Of a stretch of 64,000 nucleotides of DNA, positions 5,470 to 47,168 are shown in pieces. Numbering within the stretch: the first letter of the stretch is position 1; each line of letters opens with the position of its first letter. The notes under the pieces are model-generated. The model worked only from the letters and a program-made list of their open reading frames with translations, was not told where the DNA came from and made no database searches. The DNA is taken from the sequence record OM319461.1. One strand, 5' to 3'. The translations under genes were made by a program, and so were the position numbers.

Positions 5470-5664
5470 TTAACAGAATGTGTCTATACGTTTGTGTTTC
5501 GGTTGTTTAGGCAGCGCCTGTTTGCTTGTAACAGGCGTTTGCTTTCGTGCTGGTGTGATGCGTAGGTTGGCAAGTAAAACCCCACCTACGGCAACACAGA
5601 GGATCAATAAAGAACCTATTACTAACAAATTATCCGTCCTTATTATTTCGGAATATAACGCCAC
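5470..5664 (-). CDS. small single-TM hypothetical protein
   Basis: Hydrophobic segment then basic tail; start uncertain. Confidence 0.45.
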   Translation of the reverse strand: MALYSEIIRTDNLLVIGSLLILCVAVGGVLLANLRITPARKQTPVTSKQALPKQPKHKRIDTFC

Positions 5665-6272
5665 TCTGCGGTCTCGGCACGAATAGGCATATTCGCATTG
5701 ACCAAGTTCTTGATTAAGCGGGCTAGGTTTTCAAATACAATGCGGTTATGATTGCATTGTGCTTCAAGCATTTTGCGTTTATACCATTTGCGCAGTAGCA
5801 GTATACAGCGCTCGTAACCTTCGTCGTGGTCAGTTGTCACAATACGCTTAGGAAAGATTGCTGATGGTTGAACATTAAATACATCGGCGTTTTTGTCTTG
5901 TCGGTATAGACCTTCTTTACTGCGTGTTGTCGTGCGACGGAAAGCAAACGAATCTGCTTTGTTCAGAACGATCAAATGATCTAAACGAGAAGGTACAAGG
6001 TTAAAGCGCATGATCCAACAGTTAACACGGATGTCTTTCGTACAGGTAATGTGCGAGTAGTTCAAATCAACCCATGCTTTAATGTCACTGTACTTATGCT
6101 CATGCGTTCCTTCTAACCAGCCCAGCTTCTTAATTGCTTCGGCAATGCGCATCACCAAAGGCTCGGTTTTCATTAGGTGGGCTTGAGTCTTACCAGAGTC
6201 ATTGTTAAAATAACCCTTGCGAACTTTGTTGCCCAATAGTGTTTTTGTTTCGGAGTTTCTAATTACAGACAT
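5643..6272 (-). CDS. hypothetical protein, early paralog family
   Basis: YFNNDSGKT / IKAWVDLNYSHI shared with 6282-6932. Confidence 0.75.
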   Translation of the reverse strand: MSVIRNSETKTLLGNKVRKGYFNNDSGKTQAHLMKTEPLVMRIAEAIKKLGWLEGTHEHKYSDIKAWVDLNYSHITCTKDIRVNCWIMRFNLVPSRLDHLIVLNKADSFAFRRTTTRSKEGLYRQDKNADVFNVQPSAIFPKRIVTTDHDEGYERCILLLRKWYKRKMLEAQCNHNRIVFENLARLIKNLVNANMPIRAETAEWRYIPK

Positions 6273-6281
6273 GGTGGTCTC

Positions 6282-6932
6282 CTAAAGTGCTTTTAGTTGA
6301 TGTTTGATTGCTGCGTAGCGATGAATGCGAGAAGTCCAGAATTGTTTCTTTTCTCGCAAGGCACAGAGATAGTCGATAAACTCAGTTAAGCCTTGACGGG
6401 CATGGGGAGTCAACTCCATGACAAAAAGTAGGTCTTCCAGATGACGGATAAAGTAACCCATACCATGTGCATGACATTCCCAACGATCGTCGCCGTGATA
6501 CATACTGCCAACGATGTTTGTTTTGTTTAGTCGGTAGTATCCGCGCTCATCTTTGAAAGTATATGGCGAGATGTCACCACGAGGAAAGACTTTAAGTGCT
6601 GATTCCATTGGACCATTAGGAACAAGAATAAAATCATCGAGAGAAGTGATTTCACGATCCATGCGACATGCAAGGTTAACCAATGTAACGTCCTTGCGAT
6701 TAAGATGCGGATAGTTGCGCTTAACCCAAGCCTCGATCTCGGTGCTGGTGAATACATGATGACCTTTTACAGCAACGTGCTTTGCTACGAGTTCGGCTAC
6801 ATAACCGGTTAGTCCATCGTCTTTGTATTTACGGGTTGTTTTGTCGGAGTCGTTTTGAAAGTAGATCTTTGTAAGTACGACACCGTCACGCAAATAATCG
6901 TTGTTTGCTCTGCGTCTTTTAATAGCTGCCAT
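6282..6932 (-). CDS. hypothetical protein, early paralog family
   Basis: YFQNDSDKT / IEAWVKRNYPHL. Confidence 0.75.
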   Translation of the reverse strand: MAAIKRRRANNDYLRDGVVLTKIYFQNDSDKTTRKYKDDGLTGYVAELVAKHVAVKGHHVFTSTEIEAWVKRNYPHLNRKDVTLVNLACRMDREITSLDDFILVPNGPMESALKVFPRGDISPYTFKDERGYYRLNKTNIVGSMYHGDDRWECHAHGMGYFIRHLEDLLFVMELTPHARQGLTEFIDYLCALREKKQFWTSRIHRYAAIKHQLKAL

Positions 6933-6966
6933 TTTAGCGATTTCCAAAAATAAAGATTAAGATCAA

Positions 6967-6990
6967 GCAGCCTCGCCGAAGCGAGACTGC
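6967..6990 (-). terminator. intrinsic terminator, UUCG loop
   Basis: GCAGTCTCGC-TTCG-GCGAGGCTGC then U-rich tract. Confidence 0.85.
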
Positions 6991-6999
6991 GAACAAGGA

Positions 7000-7314
7000 T
7001 TAGCCGCGCCAGTTGTTCTGAGTCACGTCTGTGTGTTTATCGATGTCTGCAATTTCAACAATCTCCCAAGTACTTGGAGAGTTAGAGTTTTCGTTTGCAC
7101 GCATTGCTAGGAAGTTCAAAGCTTCTTGGCGTGTGTATGGACCATCGATAGAAATCAAAGGAACACCAGGAATAACAGTAATCTTATCTGTTTTAGGATC
7201 ACGTGTTTCGCGAGCCTTTGTTTTCATTACAGGGCGAACTTCTGTTTGGTTGCCATTCCATTTAACGTAACGGCCAGTGTATTTGATTGCTACTAGATCT
7301 GTTGCTTTAGTCAT
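7000..7314 (-). CDS. hypothetical protein
   Basis: GGAG SD, operon-packed ORF. Confidence 0.75.
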   Translation of the reverse strand: MTKATDLVAIKYTGRYVKWNGNQTEVRPVMKTKARETRDPKTDKITVIPGVPLISIDGPYTRQEALNFLAMRANENSNSPSTWEIVEIADIDKHTDVTQNNWRG

Positions 7315-7328
7315 GGTTATTTCTCCAA

Positions 7329-8069
7329 TTATGCGAATTTATTACGCCAGTGATAAGTTGTGTTAAACCAGCCAAGTAGGCCAGTCTCGGTTGTGCATTT
7401 AGGACAGGTCTTACCGTGAATAAGTTCGGTAAGCGTCAAGTCATATTTGCCATGTTTAGAGCAACGCTTGGTTGCTAGCATTGGACCAGAGACAAGAAAC
7501 TCGAAGTTCGGATTGTCACTATGAAATTGGCCCATGTTGTTCTTGCCGACATTCTTTTCGATTTTAGAATGCCAGCTTTTGTATTTGCGATCTACAAGGT
7601 CATTGTGCAATAGTGCACAGACAGGACAAGAACACGCTACAGTTTTATTGCGCTTGATGCGATCAACAATAAAGTTAGGTTCTTGACGAAACAGACCATG
7701 TTTAGGACAGCGAAACAGTCTAGGCTGAGCCATAATGAAAGGACGATCGTCGAGGTATTCGACTTCCCATCCATGTACTCGCTGGTAAACAAGAGCAGGC
7801 GGAATCTTTGTTGCTGTTAGATTCTGACCTTGCTTTGTTGACTTGTTGCAATCCTCACAGACATGAGAAGGTTTGTCGTCCATGCTGTAAATGAGGCGCT
7901 CCATGGAAACGGTTTTGTCTCCGTGCCAACGACAAGTAACCTCGACGTTTTCGTGGCGTTTAAAGAACGTGCGCATCGAGGCTAGCTTTAGTTCTTGTCC
8001 ATAGACAATGGCCATGGCATCTTCTAAAAGATCGCGTGTCATTGTTTCTGGGAAAACAGGATGGCTCAT
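7329..8069 (-). CDS. triple CxxHG...CxxC zinc-finger protein (DUF723-like)
   Basis: CRWHG..CEDC, CPKHG..CPVC, CSKHG..CPKC repeats. Confidence 0.7.
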   Translation of the reverse strand: MSHPVFPETMTRDLLEDAMAIVYGQELKLASMRTFFKRHENVEVTCRWHGDKTVSMERLIYSMDDKPSHVCEDCNKSTKQGQNLTATKIPPALVYQRVHGWEVEYLDDRPFIMAQPRLFRCPKHGLFRQEPNFIVDRIKRNKTVACSCPVCALLHNDLVDRKYKSWHSKIEKNVGKNNMGQFHSDNPNFEFLVSGPMLATKRCSKHGKYDLTLTELIHGKTCPKCTTETGLLGWFNTTYHWRNKFA

Positions 8070-8071
8070 TG

Positions 8072-8200
8072 TTAATCCTCTTGTACAGCGTATAGAATAT
8101 CATCGTACTGAAGATCGCCGGTGATGTCATCGTAGATGCCGTCGTCTTCAAAGATGCTTGTGATATCTTGTTCTAGTTCGTAAGTAGTTTCAAAAGACAT
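8072..8200 (-). CDS. 42-aa highly acidic protein (DNA-mimic candidate)
   Basis: MSFETTYELEQDITSIFEDDGIYDDITGDLQYDDILYAVQED; AAGGAAACCACT-ATG. Confidence 0.7.
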   Translation of the reverse strand: MSFETTYELEQDITSIFEDDGIYDDITGDLQYDDILYAVQED

Positions 8201-8239
8201 AGTGGTTTCCTTTATCTTTAAGGTGGATAGATTCACATT

Positions 8240-8253
8240 GGTTATATAGAAAT
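8240..8253 (-). promoter_or_regulatory. putative early promoter
   Basis: ATTTCTATATAACC on minus; recurrent intergenic motif resembling phiKZ early TATATTAC. Confidence 0.7.
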
Positions 8254-8310
8254 ATAAACCGAATGATAACATAGATTATCGGAGACCCTCGTTAGAAGAT
8301 CTCCTGTAGT

Positions 8311-8970
8311 CTACGCTGCATTTAGTCGTTTTTGAAAATCTCGTCGTTGTAAGTATTCAGGACGAACTTGAATTGGAGAATAAGTTTGACCGCTGTCAAG
8401 CTTATCTTGGATATAGTCAACTAGCTTTAAGATGAAGTCCAAAGAAGACTGTGCAAGTGGCGTCCCACCGTGCGTGCCTTTGTTATAGATCTTCATCAAA
8501 GAGTTAACGAGTTGCTCTAGTCCATTGTGGTGAACTGCCATTGGATCCCGGCTATTGAAGTTTTCCGGAATCAACTTGGACTTCGATGCAAAGAAGTACG
8601 CATCGTCATGAAAGCATACGTACATAGGATAACCATTGTCAATATGGCGAATGTGTGAAATTGTCATTGCCAATGATTTCTCAAGGATAACGACATCTTC
8701 AACAGAGGTTAGCTGTCTTTCAAATAGACGTGCTGCATTGAGGGTCATGAATGGACCTTTACAAACATCGCGGTATTCCTCACAGCGTCGAGCCAGATCA
8801 GAAAGTTCCACGATTGTAGCTACCTCTTCAGGAACAATCGTATTTCGTAAAAGGCTGATTGCACGACGTACAGGCAAAGCATGCTCACTATGTAGTTTCT
8901 CAGTATCGTTGTGGACACGGACACGGTAGTAAGCATTATCGCCGATGTAGATTTTCATTCGTTTAGCCAT
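8311..8970 (-). CDS. hypothetical protein, distant member of early paralog family
   Basis: VHNDTEK, LTSVEDVVIL, HHNGL match motifs of 5643/6282 genes. Confidence 0.7.
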   Translation of the reverse strand: MAKRMKIYIGDNAYYRVRVHNDTEKLHSEHALPVRRAISLLRNTIVPEEVATIVELSDLARRCEEYRDVCKGPFMTLNAARLFERQLTSVEDVVILEKSLAMTISHIRHIDNGYPMYVCFHDDAYFFASKSKLIPENFNSRDPMAVHHNGLEQLVNSLMKIYNKGTHGGTPLAQSSLDFILKLVDYIQDKLDSGQTYSPIQVRPEYLQRRDFQKRLNAA

Positions 8971-8997
8971 GGTTGGTTTCTCCTAAGTTGGCTGGGA

Positions 8998-9354
8998 TTA
9001 AAGTCCGTGACGAGCACGGACTGTTTGTATTGCAGACAATAGAACTGAATCAAAGTCAGAACTTGTTACATAAGCACTTTCTTTTTGACAAAGTGTATGT
9101 ACGAGTACTCGACGCAATTCAAATTCCATTTTAGATTTGTTTAGGCCCTTACAGCGGTTAAGTACTTTTTGTACGTTAACTGACTGACGGTTGCCAATCC
9201 AAATGCTGATGCCTACTGCTTTGTTGTAAGCAAGTTCAAGATCAGCTTTTGGGTTAGTTGAAGTTTTGTCATTTAGTGATGTTACTTTAAGCATGAAAGC
9301 AACGATCATGATAGCAAGAACTACAACAGTTAGAATTGCGCCAAAGATACTCAT
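8998..9354 (-). CDS. single-TM hypothetical protein
   Basis: N-terminal hydrophobic helix; AAGGA SD. Confidence 0.75.
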   Translation of the reverse strand: MSIFGAILTVVVLAIMIVAFMLKVTSLNDKTSTNPKADLELAYNKAVGISIWIGNRQSVNVQKVLNRCKGLNKSKMEFELRRVLVHTLCQKESAYVTSSDFDSVLLSAIQTVRARHGL

Positions 9355-9386
9355 AATAAAATTCCTTCTTTTATTTGGTTTCGTTT

Positions 9387-9731
9387 TTAGTCGGCAAAAG
9401 TTTGCACGACGATGTTTTGGATATAGCGACGAATCTCGTCACGTTTGCCTGTACCACCTTGGCCGCCGATGTAGACTTTAAAGCCACCACATGAGGTTAC
9501 AAGGTTGACATCGTTGATTGTGATGTCGTATGGGAAGCGAACTGCGACGTGGTCAGACACAAGCCACTCAGTGCCATCGTGCAAGACAACGTCATTGTCT
9601 TCGCCTAGTTCTTTTGTCACATAGTGACGGATAGAGTTAAACAATGCTGCGTTGATTTCCGGTGCTTCGTTGAAGTATTGAATGCGAGGGAAAGTGTTTT
9701 TGATTACGCGTAGTTTGTTTTGAGTAGACAT
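9387..9731 (-). CDS. hypothetical protein
   Basis: GGAGAATCCAACC-ATG leader. Confidence 0.75.
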   Translation of the reverse strand: MSTQNKLRVIKNTFPRIQYFNEAPEINAALFNSIRHYVTKELGEDNDVVLHDGTEWLVSDHVAVRFPYDITINDVNLVTSCGGFKVYIGGQGGTGKRDEIRRYIQNIVVQTFAD

Positions 9732-12329: not shown

Positions 12330-12393
12330 GATATGTTTCCTTTTAGTTTAGGATAGAATAATAATCGAGGGCCCTCGTAAAGGCCCTCTGTTA

Positions 12394-12792: not shown

Positions 12793-12899
12793 GGTTTGTT
12801 TCTCCAAAAGAAAAATGGGATTGAGTTTAGGTTAAAGAGCCTACGTTAAACCCTAAGGTTTAACATAGACTTAGTGGATTATATATTTTAATCCATGTA

Positions 12900-12913
12900 G
12901 GTAATATAGAGAT
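12900..12913 (-). promoter_or_regulatory. putative early promoter
   Basis: ATCTCTATATTACC. Confidence 0.75.
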
Positions 12914-13374: not shown

Positions 13375-13388
13375 GGTAATATAGAGAT
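13375..13388 (-). promoter_or_regulatory. putative early promoter
   Basis: ATCTCTATATTACC. Confidence 0.75.
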
Positions 13389-36132: not shown

Positions 36133-36811
36133 TGTACTTCTCCAGTGATAGGAATAGGCGGAACGGGCCATGTGCGTTAGAATAGATGTTGATGATGTGT
36201 TTACCGATGAACTCGTAGCGATAGATCCAATCGCCATTTTGTTCGTAAACAGGCAAGCCACGACGATTAAGACACAGATGATTTGTACATGGGTACTGTG
36301 TAGTCCANTATGCAATTTCTTCTTCAGTTGCGTCGGCGTCGTGTACACGGTGTGGGTAGTAAACAGTTGCAGGAATGAAACTGTCACTGTAATAAGGACG
36401 ACCNATNTCAACGCCGTTGTTTACTTCGATGANGTTCATTGTNTCTTCGTCNACNAGNCATTCGATAACACCAAACGNAGTNGANGANGTCCACTTCAAG
36501 ATCTTNGCTTCTTCGTCNACNACTTGGATNTCAAAGAAAACNGTTTCTGATGTATGNACNGTATTGATTTCTTTNGATANCAAGAAACCATCNTTNCCGA
36601 AACGAAGTGTTTCCATNTANGGAAGCTTNNNNATCTTNAGNTGACGCTGCCAAACNGTTTGATCNTCNGCAATGATTTGTTTNAACTCAACNTCCAAGAA
36701 NGCNTTGATTACTTCCATAGGGAAATCATCNATACCAAGTTGACGNAGAATTTGAACTTGACGGAANCCNAGTAGGTGACANGCAGTNAGTACAGNTAGA
36801 TTGTTTTTCAT
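36083..36811 (-). CDS. hypothetical protein with polymorphic (N-rich) N-terminal part
   Basis: Ns fall mainly at third codon positions of this frame; GAGG SD; follows early promoter. Confidence 0.75.
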   Translation of the reverse strand: MKNNLXVXTXCHLXXFRQVQIXRQLGXDDFPMEVIXXFLXVEXKQIIXXDQXVWQRXXKXXKLXXMETLRFXXDGFLXXKEINXXHTSEXVFFXIQXXDEEXKILKWXXXTXFGVIEXXXDEXTMNXIEVNNGVXXGRPYYSDSFIPATVYYPHRVHDADATEEEIAXWTTQYPCTNHLCLNRRGLPVYEQNGDWIYRYEFIGKHIINIYSNAHGPFRLFLSLEKYNDRFPGCLKEVSFQAA

Positions 36812-36849: not shown

Positions 36850-36863
36850 GGTAATATAGAGAT
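36850..36863 (-). promoter_or_regulatory. putative early promoter
   Basis: ATCTCTATATTACC. Confidence 0.75.
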
Positions 36864-40787: not shown

Positions 40788-40847
40788 AATACATTTTCCT
40801 TATAAGGATTATTTGAAAGAAGTGGATAACAAGTTGCTATCCACCTT

Positions 40848-40861
40848 GGTTATATAGAGAT
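40848..40861 (-). promoter_or_regulatory. putative early promoter
   Basis: ATCTCTATATAACC. Confidence 0.75.
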
Positions 40862-47115: not shown

Positions 47116-47154
47116 AATTGTCTCCTTTGTTGGTTTAGTGTGAATATTCACATT

Positions 47155-47168
47155 GGTTATATAGAAAT
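47155..47168 (-). promoter_or_regulatory. putative early promoter
   Basis: ATTTCTATATAACC. Confidence 0.75.

What the first reader, a model, noticed from the sequence alone, without database searches (positions are those of the whole stretch)
8072..8200. 42-aa ultra-acidic first-expressed protein: DNA-mimic/anti-defence candidate
14 of 42 residues are D/E, none are K/R/H, aromatics are regularly spaced, and YDDI occurs twice. It is the first ORF after an early promoter and has a strong SD. This composition resembles phage DNA mimics and acidic inhibitors such as Ocr, Arn, Ugi and AcrIIA4.
Basis: partly seen in the sequence, partly recalled or inferred. Interest (0 to 1): 0.65.

Follow-up and report, generated by a model that had tools for sequence, protein, structure and literature searches.

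The report
Acidic micro-protein paired with zinc-finger protein
A real, conserved 42-residue, extremely acidic protein gene opens a three-gene early operon of a nucleus-forming Vibrio jumbo phage, and its fixed pairing with a basic zinc-finger DNA-binding protein suggests it is that protein's partner rather than a free-standing anti-defence DNA mimic, though neither role has been tested.

Summary
The window is bases 1-64000 of Vibrio phage C-ZP2022. This jumbo phage has a chimallin gene and virion-RNA-polymerase-type early promoters.

**The ORF is real.** It lies on the minus strand (8200..8072) and is annotated CZP2022_11.
- It has 14 D/E and no K/R/H, and YDDI occurs twice. At net -0.33 per residue it is the most acidic of 62 annotated proteins.
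- Against phage vB_pir03 there are 7 synonymous and 3 non-synonymous changes (dN/dS 0.08).
- It follows a good AGGA ribosome site and one of 29 strand-specific TCTATATWAC motifs.
- "Regularly spaced aromatics" did not hold.

**It has no relatives beyond pir03.** It matched no family, and its fold prediction was not confident.

**The new point is its context.**
- In all six genomes where the downstream gene gp9 has a homologue, the order is the same: a small acidic ORF (42-63 aa, net -5 to -14), a basic triple CxxHG...CxxC protein of CapR/DUF723 type with no nuclease domain (net +9 to +18), then a gp9-like gene.
- The genes are tightly coupled, and in two lineages the cassette is bracketed by hairpins.
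- Acidity is kept at this position even though sequence similarity is lost.

**Reading.**
- Most likely (0.45), it is an acidic partner or antagonist of the zinc-finger protein.
- A stand-alone DNA mimic, or an acr-aca-like arrangement, remains possible (0.25).
- The co-folding test could not be run.

The parts
8072..8200 (-). gp11 (CZP2022_11): 42-aa hyper-acidic micro-protein, P0001
   Evidence: Translation; annotation; dN/dS 0.08 against pir03; charge outlier; the only relative is the pir03 orthologue at 93% identity.
8206..8213 (-). Ribosome-binding site (AAAGGAAA; AGGA 7 nt before the ATG)
   Evidence: Read from the sequence. It is identical in pir03. The same AGGAAACCACTATG start context is used by the gene behind the promoter motif at 13385.
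8231..8253 (-). Early (virion-RNA-polymerase-type) promoter motif: core TCTATATAAC at 8250..8241, extended by CAATGTGAAT
   Evidence: 9 copies in the window against 0.2 expected, all on the minus strand. The extended consensus is shown. Genome-wide counts, each all on one strand, are 29 in C-ZP2022, 29 in pir03 and 26 in sm033, and two copies lie just upstream of chimallin. It fits the described type of an about 10-nt AT-rich motif centred near -10 (PMC7598289). No transcription start has been mapped.
8281..8304 (-). 10-bp hairpin after gp12, terminator-like; upstream boundary of the cassette
   Evidence: RNA fold (z -2.7 for the whole intergenic region). It is conserved in pir03. An equivalent hairpin precedes the small ORF in sm033.
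7329..8069 (-). gp10 (CZP2022_10): basic (net +9) 246-aa protein with three CxxHG...CxxC zinc-finger modules of CapR/DUF723/DUF4379 type and no nuclease domain. Its ATG lies 2 nt after the gp11 stop.
   Evidence: BLASTP E 5e-11 to the zinc-finger repeat region of the phiR1-37 g151 endonuclease, which carries DUF4379, CapR and DUF723. DUF723 matches 4 of 5 family members below threshold. The cysteines and HG are invariant.
7000..7314 (-). gp9 (CZP2022_9): 104-aa conserved protein of unknown function, third gene of the cassette
   Evidence: Homologues at 41-53% identity in sm033 and three metagenomic contigs. No family, PDB or Atlas match.
6967..6990 (-). Terminator-like hairpin ending the gp11-gp10-gp9 unit
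   Evidence: Scan (10-bp stem, 7 GC pairs, T-rich tail). An equivalent hairpin follows the gp9 homologue in sm033.

Best explanation
gp11 is a translated early micro-protein that works together with the next gene's product, gp10. gp10 is a basic array of three CapR/DUF723-type zinc fingers, the DNA-binding part of T5orf172-type homing endonucleases, here without any nuclease domain. The two are made from one early mRNA in coupled fashion. Inferred: the disordered, carboxylate-rich peptide binds the positively charged DNA-binding surface of gp10. It would then act as a DNA-charge mimic in trans, either as a chaperone or antagonist that keeps gp10 off non-target DNA or holds it inactive until the right time or place, or as a regulatory subunit. 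Shown: the gene is real and under purifying selection. It is extremely acidic. It sits behind an early-type promoter motif. The acidic-small / basic-zinc-finger / gp9-like order and coupling are conserved in six genomes. Inferred: translation, physical binding, and the effect on DNA binding.
For: Gene reality: dN/dS 0.08, with 7 of 10 changes synonymous, and a synonymous variant in related strains. Coupling: TAA, then 2 nt, then ATG in C-ZP2022. In the other genomes the junction is a 1-4 nt overlap or a 9-nt gap with a GGAGG site. Conserved cassette: sm033 and contigs L007, L008 and L009 all carry a small acidic ORF (net -5 to -14), a basic 233-246-aa triple CxxHG..CxxC protein (net +9 to +18), then a gp9 homologue. 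Acidity at this position is kept although sequence similarity between gp11 and the sm033-type small proteins is undetectable. No other of 62 window proteins reaches -0.10 per residue. The small and zinc-finger genes both evolve much faster than gp9: 2-19% and 20-24% identity against 41-53% between clades. Hairpins bracket the three genes in both C-ZP2022 and sm033. Zinc-finger modules of this type are DNA-binding, and CapR is a precedent for a nuclease-less derivative used as a repressor (bioRxiv 10.1101/2023.03.23.533998). gp11 alone gives no confident fold (pLDDT 55), as expected for a peptide that folds on a partner.
Against: There is no direct evidence of binding; the co-folding job never ran. 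Conserved adjacency and opposite charge are circumstantial. The four sm033-type small proteins are related to each other, so independent support amounts to about two lineages. gp10 itself falls below Pfam thresholds and its model is poor, so its DNA binding is inferred from relatives. AlphaFold on a single 42-aa sequence is a weak test of disorder.
Confidence: 0.45

Rival explanations
1. gp11 is a stand-alone acidic inhibitor of a host nucleic-acid-binding protein: a DNA or RNA mimic used for anti-defence or host takeover. gp10 would be the DNA-binding regulator of the locus, an arrangement like anti-CRISPR (acr) genes followed by an aca repressor gene.
For: It has extreme acidity with no basic residues. 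It occupies an early-promoter, first-gene position. It is small, fast-evolving and an ORFan. Non-homologous small proteins sit upstream of a homologous DNA-binding protein, which is the 'guilt by association' signature of acr-aca loci (own knowledge). The 110-nt intergenic region is 96% identical between phages whose neighbouring genes show dS 0.4-1.2. It contains AATCTAT-containing repeats on both sides of the promoter core that could be operators.
Against: There is no similarity to any known mimic, Acr or anti-defence family and no confident fold; known mimics are folded proteins of about 55-170 aa (own knowledge). The phage has chimallin, and such phages are already insensitive to DNA-targeting defences. 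Unlike Aca proteins, gp10 is not better conserved than its small neighbour. In four of the six genomes the small ORF is not promoter-proximal.
Confidence: 0.25
2. gp11 binds some other phage or host protein unrelated to nucleic-acid mimicry, for example as an assembly, import or localisation adaptor of the early infection stage. Its adjacency to gp10 would then reflect only shared timing.
For: Other notes of this scan report acidic small early proteins as common in nucleus-forming jumbo phages (unchecked). The cassette also contains gp9, the best-conserved member, of unknown function. Wider synteny with flanking proteins of about 210 aa is kept.
Against: It does not explain why acidity is kept specifically at the position coupled to a strongly basic protein in every genome.
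Confidence: 0.25
3. The peptide has no function of its own. The ORF is a leader or upstream ORF whose translation only serves to load ribosomes onto gp10, or it is an annotation artefact.
For: It is very short, with a stop 2 nt before the gp10 start, and has no homologues outside one sister phage.
Against: Purifying selection acts on the amino-acid sequence (dN/dS 0.08; 93% amino-acid against 92% nucleotide identity). The extreme composition is kept in positional counterparts. sm033-type counterparts share conserved residues.
Confidence: 0.05

Closest known systems
Phage DNA-mimic proteins (Ocr, ArdA, Arn, Ugi, p56, AcrIIA4, SPO1 Gp44)
   Same: Very acidic, early-expressed and small. Plausibly occupies the DNA-binding surface of a basic DNA-binding protein.
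   Different: No sequence or profile similarity and no confident fold. At 42 aa it would be smaller than the known examples. The context points to a phage-encoded partner rather than a host defence enzyme. Binding is untested.
CapR and T5orf172 homing-endonuclease DNA-binding domains (CapR/DUF723/DUF4379 zinc fingers); this concerns the partner gp10
   Same: gp10 has three tandem CxxHG...CxxC modules that align with the repeat region of the phiR1-37 g151 endonuclease. Like CapR it lacks a nuclease domain, so it looks like a domesticated DNA-binding array.
   Different: gp10 is below Pfam thresholds. No acidic micro-protein partner has been described for CapR or these endonucleases, as far as the papers read here show. 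The target DNA is unknown.
acr-aca operons (anti-CRISPR gene followed by a DNA-binding autorepressor gene)
   Same: A strong early promoter, then a small, variable, acidic ORF, then a DNA-binding protein gene. Unrelated small ORFs sit upstream of homologous DNA-binding genes.
   Different: The DNA-binding protein is a zinc-finger array, not a helix-turn-helix Aca, and it is not better conserved than the small gene. There is no evidence of anti-CRISPR or other anti-defence activity. A third conserved gene (gp9) belongs to the unit.
Acidic disordered chaperones or tails of DNA-binding proteins (histone chaperone acidic regions; acidic C-terminal tails of SSB, T4 gp32 and T7 gp2.5)
   Same: An acidic, probably disordered segment that could shield a basic DNA-binding surface by charge mimicry.
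   Different: Here it would be a separate 42-aa polypeptide encoded upstream, not a tail or domain. This is an analogy only.

Membership tests
DNA-mimic proteins (Ocr/ArdA/Ugi/Arn/AcrIIA4 kind) | High density of surface carboxylates and a very low pI | tested here: met
   14 D/E in 42 residues, no K/R/H, net -14.
DNA-mimic proteins (Ocr/ArdA/Ugi/Arn/AcrIIA4 kind) | Stable fold that places carboxylates like DNA phosphates | tested here: inconclusive
   AlphaFold2 on the single sequence gave pLDDT 55 and no secondary structure. Only two sequences exist for an alignment.
DNA-mimic proteins (Ocr/ArdA/Ugi/Arn/AcrIIA4 kind) | Sequence or profile similarity to a described mimic family | tested here: not met
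   No Pfam, PHROG or NCBIfam hit. A full HMMER search found only the pir03 orthologue plus two repeat-protein artefacts. Atlas scores were 0.84 or lower.
DNA-mimic proteins (Ocr/ArdA/Ugi/Arn/AcrIIA4 kind) | Binds and blocks the DNA site of a DNA-binding protein | not testable with these tools
   Complex prediction did not complete and then reached its daily limit. This needs a pull-down or gel-shift assay.
acr-aca type anti-defence operon | A small variable gene directly upstream of a conserved DNA-binding regulator, behind a strong promoter | tested here: inconclusive
   The order and promoter are present. However, the DNA-binding gene is as divergent as the small one (20-24% identity) and matches no HTH (Aca-type) family in Pfam, only zinc-finger families.
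CapR/DUF723/DUF4379 zinc-finger DNA-binding modules (gp10) | Repeated Cys/His zinc-finger modules homologous to those of T5orf172-type endonucleases | tested here: met
   Three CxxHG...CxxC modules with invariant C/H/G. BLASTP E 5e-11 to the DUF4379/CapR/DUF723 region of phiR1-37 g151. PHROG 559 at E 4e-4.
CapR/DUF723/DUF4379 zinc-finger DNA-binding modules (gp10) | Reaches the Pfam gathering score | tested here: not met
   gp10 scores 12.6 bits for DUF723 against a cut-off of 20.9. Four of five family members match below threshold, best E 2e-4.
CapR-like domesticated (nuclease-less) derivative (gp10) | Absence of a T5orf172, GIY-YIG, HNH or Vsr catalytic domain | tested here: met
   No such hit in Pfam or NCBIfam. 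The three modules fill the protein's 246 aa. The neighbouring gp9 is not a split-off T5orf172 domain (hhalign probability 0.3%).
[quoted passage not shown] | An about 10-nt AT-rich, highly conserved motif upstream of early operons, strand-specific | tested here: met
   TCTATATWAC occurs 9 times against 0.2 expected in the window. Genome-wide counts, each all on one strand, are 29 in C-ZP2022, 29 in pir03 and 26 in sm033. The sites are intergenic. Two copies lie upstream of chimallin. The description of the class is in PMC7598289.
[quoted passage not shown] | A mapped transcription start about 10 nt downstream, with early timing | not testable with these tools
   No RNA run holds this phage.

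The most novel reading that the evidence does not exclude
The cassette may be a new kind of two-part regulator in nucleus-forming phages. In this reading a trans-acting, disordered acidic micro-protein gates a domesticated homing-endonuclease zinc-finger array, for example by keeping it off host or cytoplasmic DNA until it reaches the phage DNA compartment. Alternatively it is an acr-aca-like anti-defence locus whose regulator is a zinc-finger array instead of an HTH. That would make the gp10 family a new marker gene for finding anti-defence micro-proteins in jumbo phages.
Probability: 0.15. Interest if true: 0.7.

Novelty: new variant of a known kind. Interest (0 to 1): 0.4.

Why it matters
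Early genes of nucleus-forming jumbo phages are almost all of unknown function. Micro-proteins of this size are usually ignored or missed. This one comes with a concrete, testable partner hypothesis. If the acidic peptide controls a nuclease-less homing-endonuclease-type DNA-binding protein, it would show how such domesticated arrays are regulated. It would also add a very small, charge-based DNA-mimic mechanism directed at a phage protein rather than a host one. If instead it is an anti-defence factor, the conserved zinc-finger neighbour could serve as a search handle for more. As it stands it is a well-supported gene with a plausible but unproven role.

Tried and rejected
**Co-folding of gp11 with gp10.** Complex prediction was requested 17 times. 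The machine was busy each time, apart when it gave no usable answer, and the daily limit was reached. There is no verdict, and this says nothing about binding.

**Relatives of gp11.**
- The word-index search and tblastn against phages found only pir03.
- The full HMMER search also listed two repetitive, unrelated proteins, which I rejected.
- The search for related loci needs a longer query and could not be used.

**Homology of gp11 to the sm033-type small proteins.**
- BLASTP found none, and hhalign gave probability 0.06%.
- By eye, FEDDGIYDDITGDLQYDDILY aligns with their acidic C-termini. This is also the best ungapped placement, but it is not better than composition-preserving shuffles (p 0.2). 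I therefore call it a positional analogue, not a homologue.

**More cassette examples.** The viral and metagenome contig scans found none.

**Structure.**
- The gp11 model is not confident.
- The gp10 model is poor (pLDDT 54), and Foldseek against the PDB found nothing at E <= 0.001.
- PDB sequence searches of gp10 and gp9 found nothing.
- The Atlas gave no lead for gp11 or gp9.

**Other checks.**
- gp9 as a split-off nuclease domain was rejected.
- Rfam found nothing in 6800-8500.
- Amphipathic periodicity of gp11 is not significant.
- The sigma-70 promoter scan is no better than shuffles.
- The phiKZ chimallin as a single-sequence query missed the phage's chimallin; the PHROG profile found it.
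- The longer 66-aa reading from ATG 8272 was rejected. It starts upstream of the promoter core, and its frame is broken in pir03 by a 1-nt indel.

Full report
**Identity of the window.**
- Bases 7000-9500 are 100% identical to Vibrio phage C-ZP2022 (OM319461.1, 287,943 bp, host V. parahaemolyticus) at the same coordinates. They are 85.7% identical to Vibrio phage vB_pir03.
- The pir03 paper reports several multisubunit RNA polymerase genes and many best hits to phage BONAISHI (PMC7765460). BONAISHI is placed in the Chimalliviridae (PMC10587174).
- I confirmed that C-ZP2022 itself has a nuclear-shell (chimallin) gene. The match is to phrog_4795 at E 7e-27 over nearly the whole profile, at record 192709-194493. 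Phage sm033 has one too, while 14 control genomes gave no match.
- All annotated genes from 348 to 49240 are on the minus strand.

**The observation.**
- The ORF lies on the minus strand at 8200..8072 and encodes 42 aa (P0001).
- It has 14 D/E and no K/R/H, and YDDI occurs twice.
- It is annotated as CZP2022_11 and in pir03 as QNI21254, both 'hypothetical protein'.
- It is the most acidic of the 62 annotated proteins in 1-49 kb by a wide margin: -0.33 net charge per residue against -0.096 for the next.
- The aromatic residues are not regularly spaced, and there is no significant helical or strand periodicity.

**Is it a gene?**
- Against pir03 the ORF shows 7 synonymous and 3 non-synonymous substitutions (dN/dS 0.08), like its neighbours at 0.04-0.21.
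- The one variant seen in related strains in public runs (8102 A>G) is synonymous at D33.
- The alternative 66-aa reading from ATG 8272 starts upstream of the promoter core, and a 1-nt indel puts it out of frame in pir03.
- AGGA lies 7 nt before the ATG.
- No RNA data exist for this phage, so transcription and translation are inferred.

**Promoter.**
- Intergenic regions of the window share the motif TCTATATWAC, often extended by CAATGTGA.
- It occurs 9 times in the window against 0.2 expected, all on the minus strand.
- Genome-wide counts, each all on one strand, are 29 in C-ZP2022, 29 in pir03 and 26 in sm033; the reversed control pattern gives 0-1.
- Two copies sit just upstream of the chimallin gene in both C-ZP2022 and sm033.
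- This fits the published description of virion-RNA-polymerase early promoters of such phages: an about 10-nt AT-rich conserved motif centred near -10, findable by sequence analysis upstream of early operons (PMC7598289).
- The copy at 8250..8241 is 40 nt upstream of the gp11 ATG.
- A 10-bp hairpin (8304..8281) precedes it and closes the gp12 unit. A terminator-like hairpin at 6990..6967 follows gp9.
- So gp11-gp10-gp9 is a discrete early unit, one of about 29.
- The 110-nt intergenic region is 96% identical to pir03, although the flanking genes have dS 0.4-1.2.

**No relatives, no fold.**
- gp11 gave no hit in Pfam, PHROGs or NCBIfam.
- The word-index search and the exhaustive HMMER search of 1.8 billion representatives found only the pir03 orthologue. 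Two further hits were low-complexity repeat proteins that I reject.
- The Atlas gave no lead.
- AlphaFold2 on the single sequence gave pLDDT 55 with no secondary structure.

**The neighbour gp10 (7329-8069).**
- It starts 2 nt after the gp11 stop and is basic (net +9, pI 9.0).
- It contains three CxxHG...CxxC modules.
- These align with the repeat region of the phiR1-37 g151 endonuclease (E 5e-11). In that protein, and in a Vibrio T5orf172 protein, the region is recognised as DUF4379, CapR and DUF723.
- gp10 and its relatives match DUF723 only below threshold (4 of 5 members).
- No nuclease domain is present.
[quoted passage not shown] The same paper describes CapR as a nuclease-less derivative that acts as a transcriptional repressor.
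- The gp10 model is poor and its fold search is uninformative.

**The conserved cassette.**
- gp9 has a 53% identical homologue in Vibrio jumbo phage vB_VpaM_sm033.
- Upstream of it lie a 240-aa protein and a 56-aa ORF. The 240-aa protein is collinear with gp10 over its full length (19% identity, pairwise E 8e-7, same three modules). The 56-aa ORF has 15 D/E and 4 K/R.
- Three further gp9 homologues on metagenome-derived contigs show the same order.
- In all six genomes the small protein is acidic (net -5 to -14; pI 4.5 or lower) and the zinc-finger protein is basic (net +9 to +18).
- The small-to-zinc-finger junctions are 1-4 nt overlaps, a 2-nt gap, or 9-nt gaps containing a ribosome site.
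- In sm033 the three genes are also bracketed by hairpins.
- Flanking genes are distantly conserved too: gp12 against the 217-aa protein upstream in L007 (E 5e-5), and gp8 against SM033_00112 (E 2e-11).
- Between the C-ZP2022 clade and the others, gp9 keeps 41-53% identity, the zinc-finger protein 20-24%, and the small protein nothing detectable.
- The four sm033-type small proteins are related to one another. Independent support for 'acidic at this position' therefore comes from about two lineages.
- Elsewhere in the window no annotated protein reaches -0.10 per residue.
- In the other genomes the small ORF is not promoter-proximal. The nearest early motif lies one to four genes upstream.

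**Interpretation.**
- The conserved coupling, the opposite charges, the parallel fast evolution and the lack of an autonomous fold make a physical partnership with gp10 the best-supported reading (0.45). The acidic peptide would shield or regulate the DNA-binding surface of a domesticated endonuclease-type zinc-finger array.
The layout of promoter, small variable acidic gene, then DNA-binding gene resembles acr-aca loci (own knowledge).
- Against that reading, nothing links gp11 to host defence. Nucleus-forming phages are already shielded from DNA-targeting systems (PMC11797060 abstract). gp10 is also not the better-conserved member of the pair.
- Another partner (0.25) or a mere leader ORF (0.05) make up the rest.
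- The planned co-folding test never ran, because the machine was busy and then the daily limit was reached.

After reaching this reading I found that s1-162016 describes a 42-aa hyper-acidic early peptide in a Vibrio jumbo phage, ahead of a basic zinc-finger protein, with the same conclusion. This report extends it with six genomes carrying the cassette, selection statistics, the genome-wide promoter census, chimallin, and the CapR/DUF723 assignment of the partner.

**Verdict.** This is a real, conserved and unusual micro-protein gene. Interest is moderate.

Noticed in passing
window 47130-47165, 40815-40858, 12865-12910, 8216-8250 (minus strand): Right after the early promoter motif, several early units begin with a short inverted repeat. 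Examples are GTGAATATTCAC at 47165 and GGATAGCAACTTGTTATCC at 40858. The transcripts would therefore start with a 5' stem-loop, possibly a stabilising or regulatory feature of early mRNAs.
   Followed up: no
window 12367-12388; L006 2039-2070; L006 560-595; L008 2040-2085: A GC-rich hairpin followed by GATTATTATT recurs as a terminator-like element in C-ZP2022, sm033 and a metagenomic relative. In sm033 it sits directly in front of an early promoter motif.
   Followed up: partly
window 5643-6272, 6282-6932, 8311-8970: gp8 and gp12, the proteins of about 210-220 aa flanking the cassette, have distant counterparts in sm033 and L007. They share a 'LN.AR...SLDDF(I/V)..P'-like stretch with them, and gp7 may belong too. 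This looks like a paralogous early family of unknown function.
   Followed up: partly
record OM319461.1 194562-194571 and 194770-194779 (outside the window); sm033 190036 and 190238: Two tandem copies of the early promoter motif lie upstream of the chimallin gene in both phages.
   Followed up: no
window about 36760-36790: The deposited sequence has ambiguous bases (N) at the start of the gene behind the promoter motif at 36860.
   Followed up: no
L002 4174-4263 (pir03 QNI21253); L006 580-864 (SM033_00105); L008 2070-2261: These are probable annotation slips. pir03 has a 30-aa ORF called across the gp11 promoter and start. The SM033_00105 start is called upstream of a promoter motif that lies inside the 'CDS'. 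The L008 small ORF probably starts at its internal Met, within the GATTATTATT element.
   Followed up: partly
window 8255-8270 and 8222-8235 (minus strand): AATCTAT occurs on both sides of the gp11 promoter core, within GATAATCTATGTTATC and GTGAATCTATCCAC. Both are fully conserved in pir03 and are candidate operator sites.
   Followed up: no
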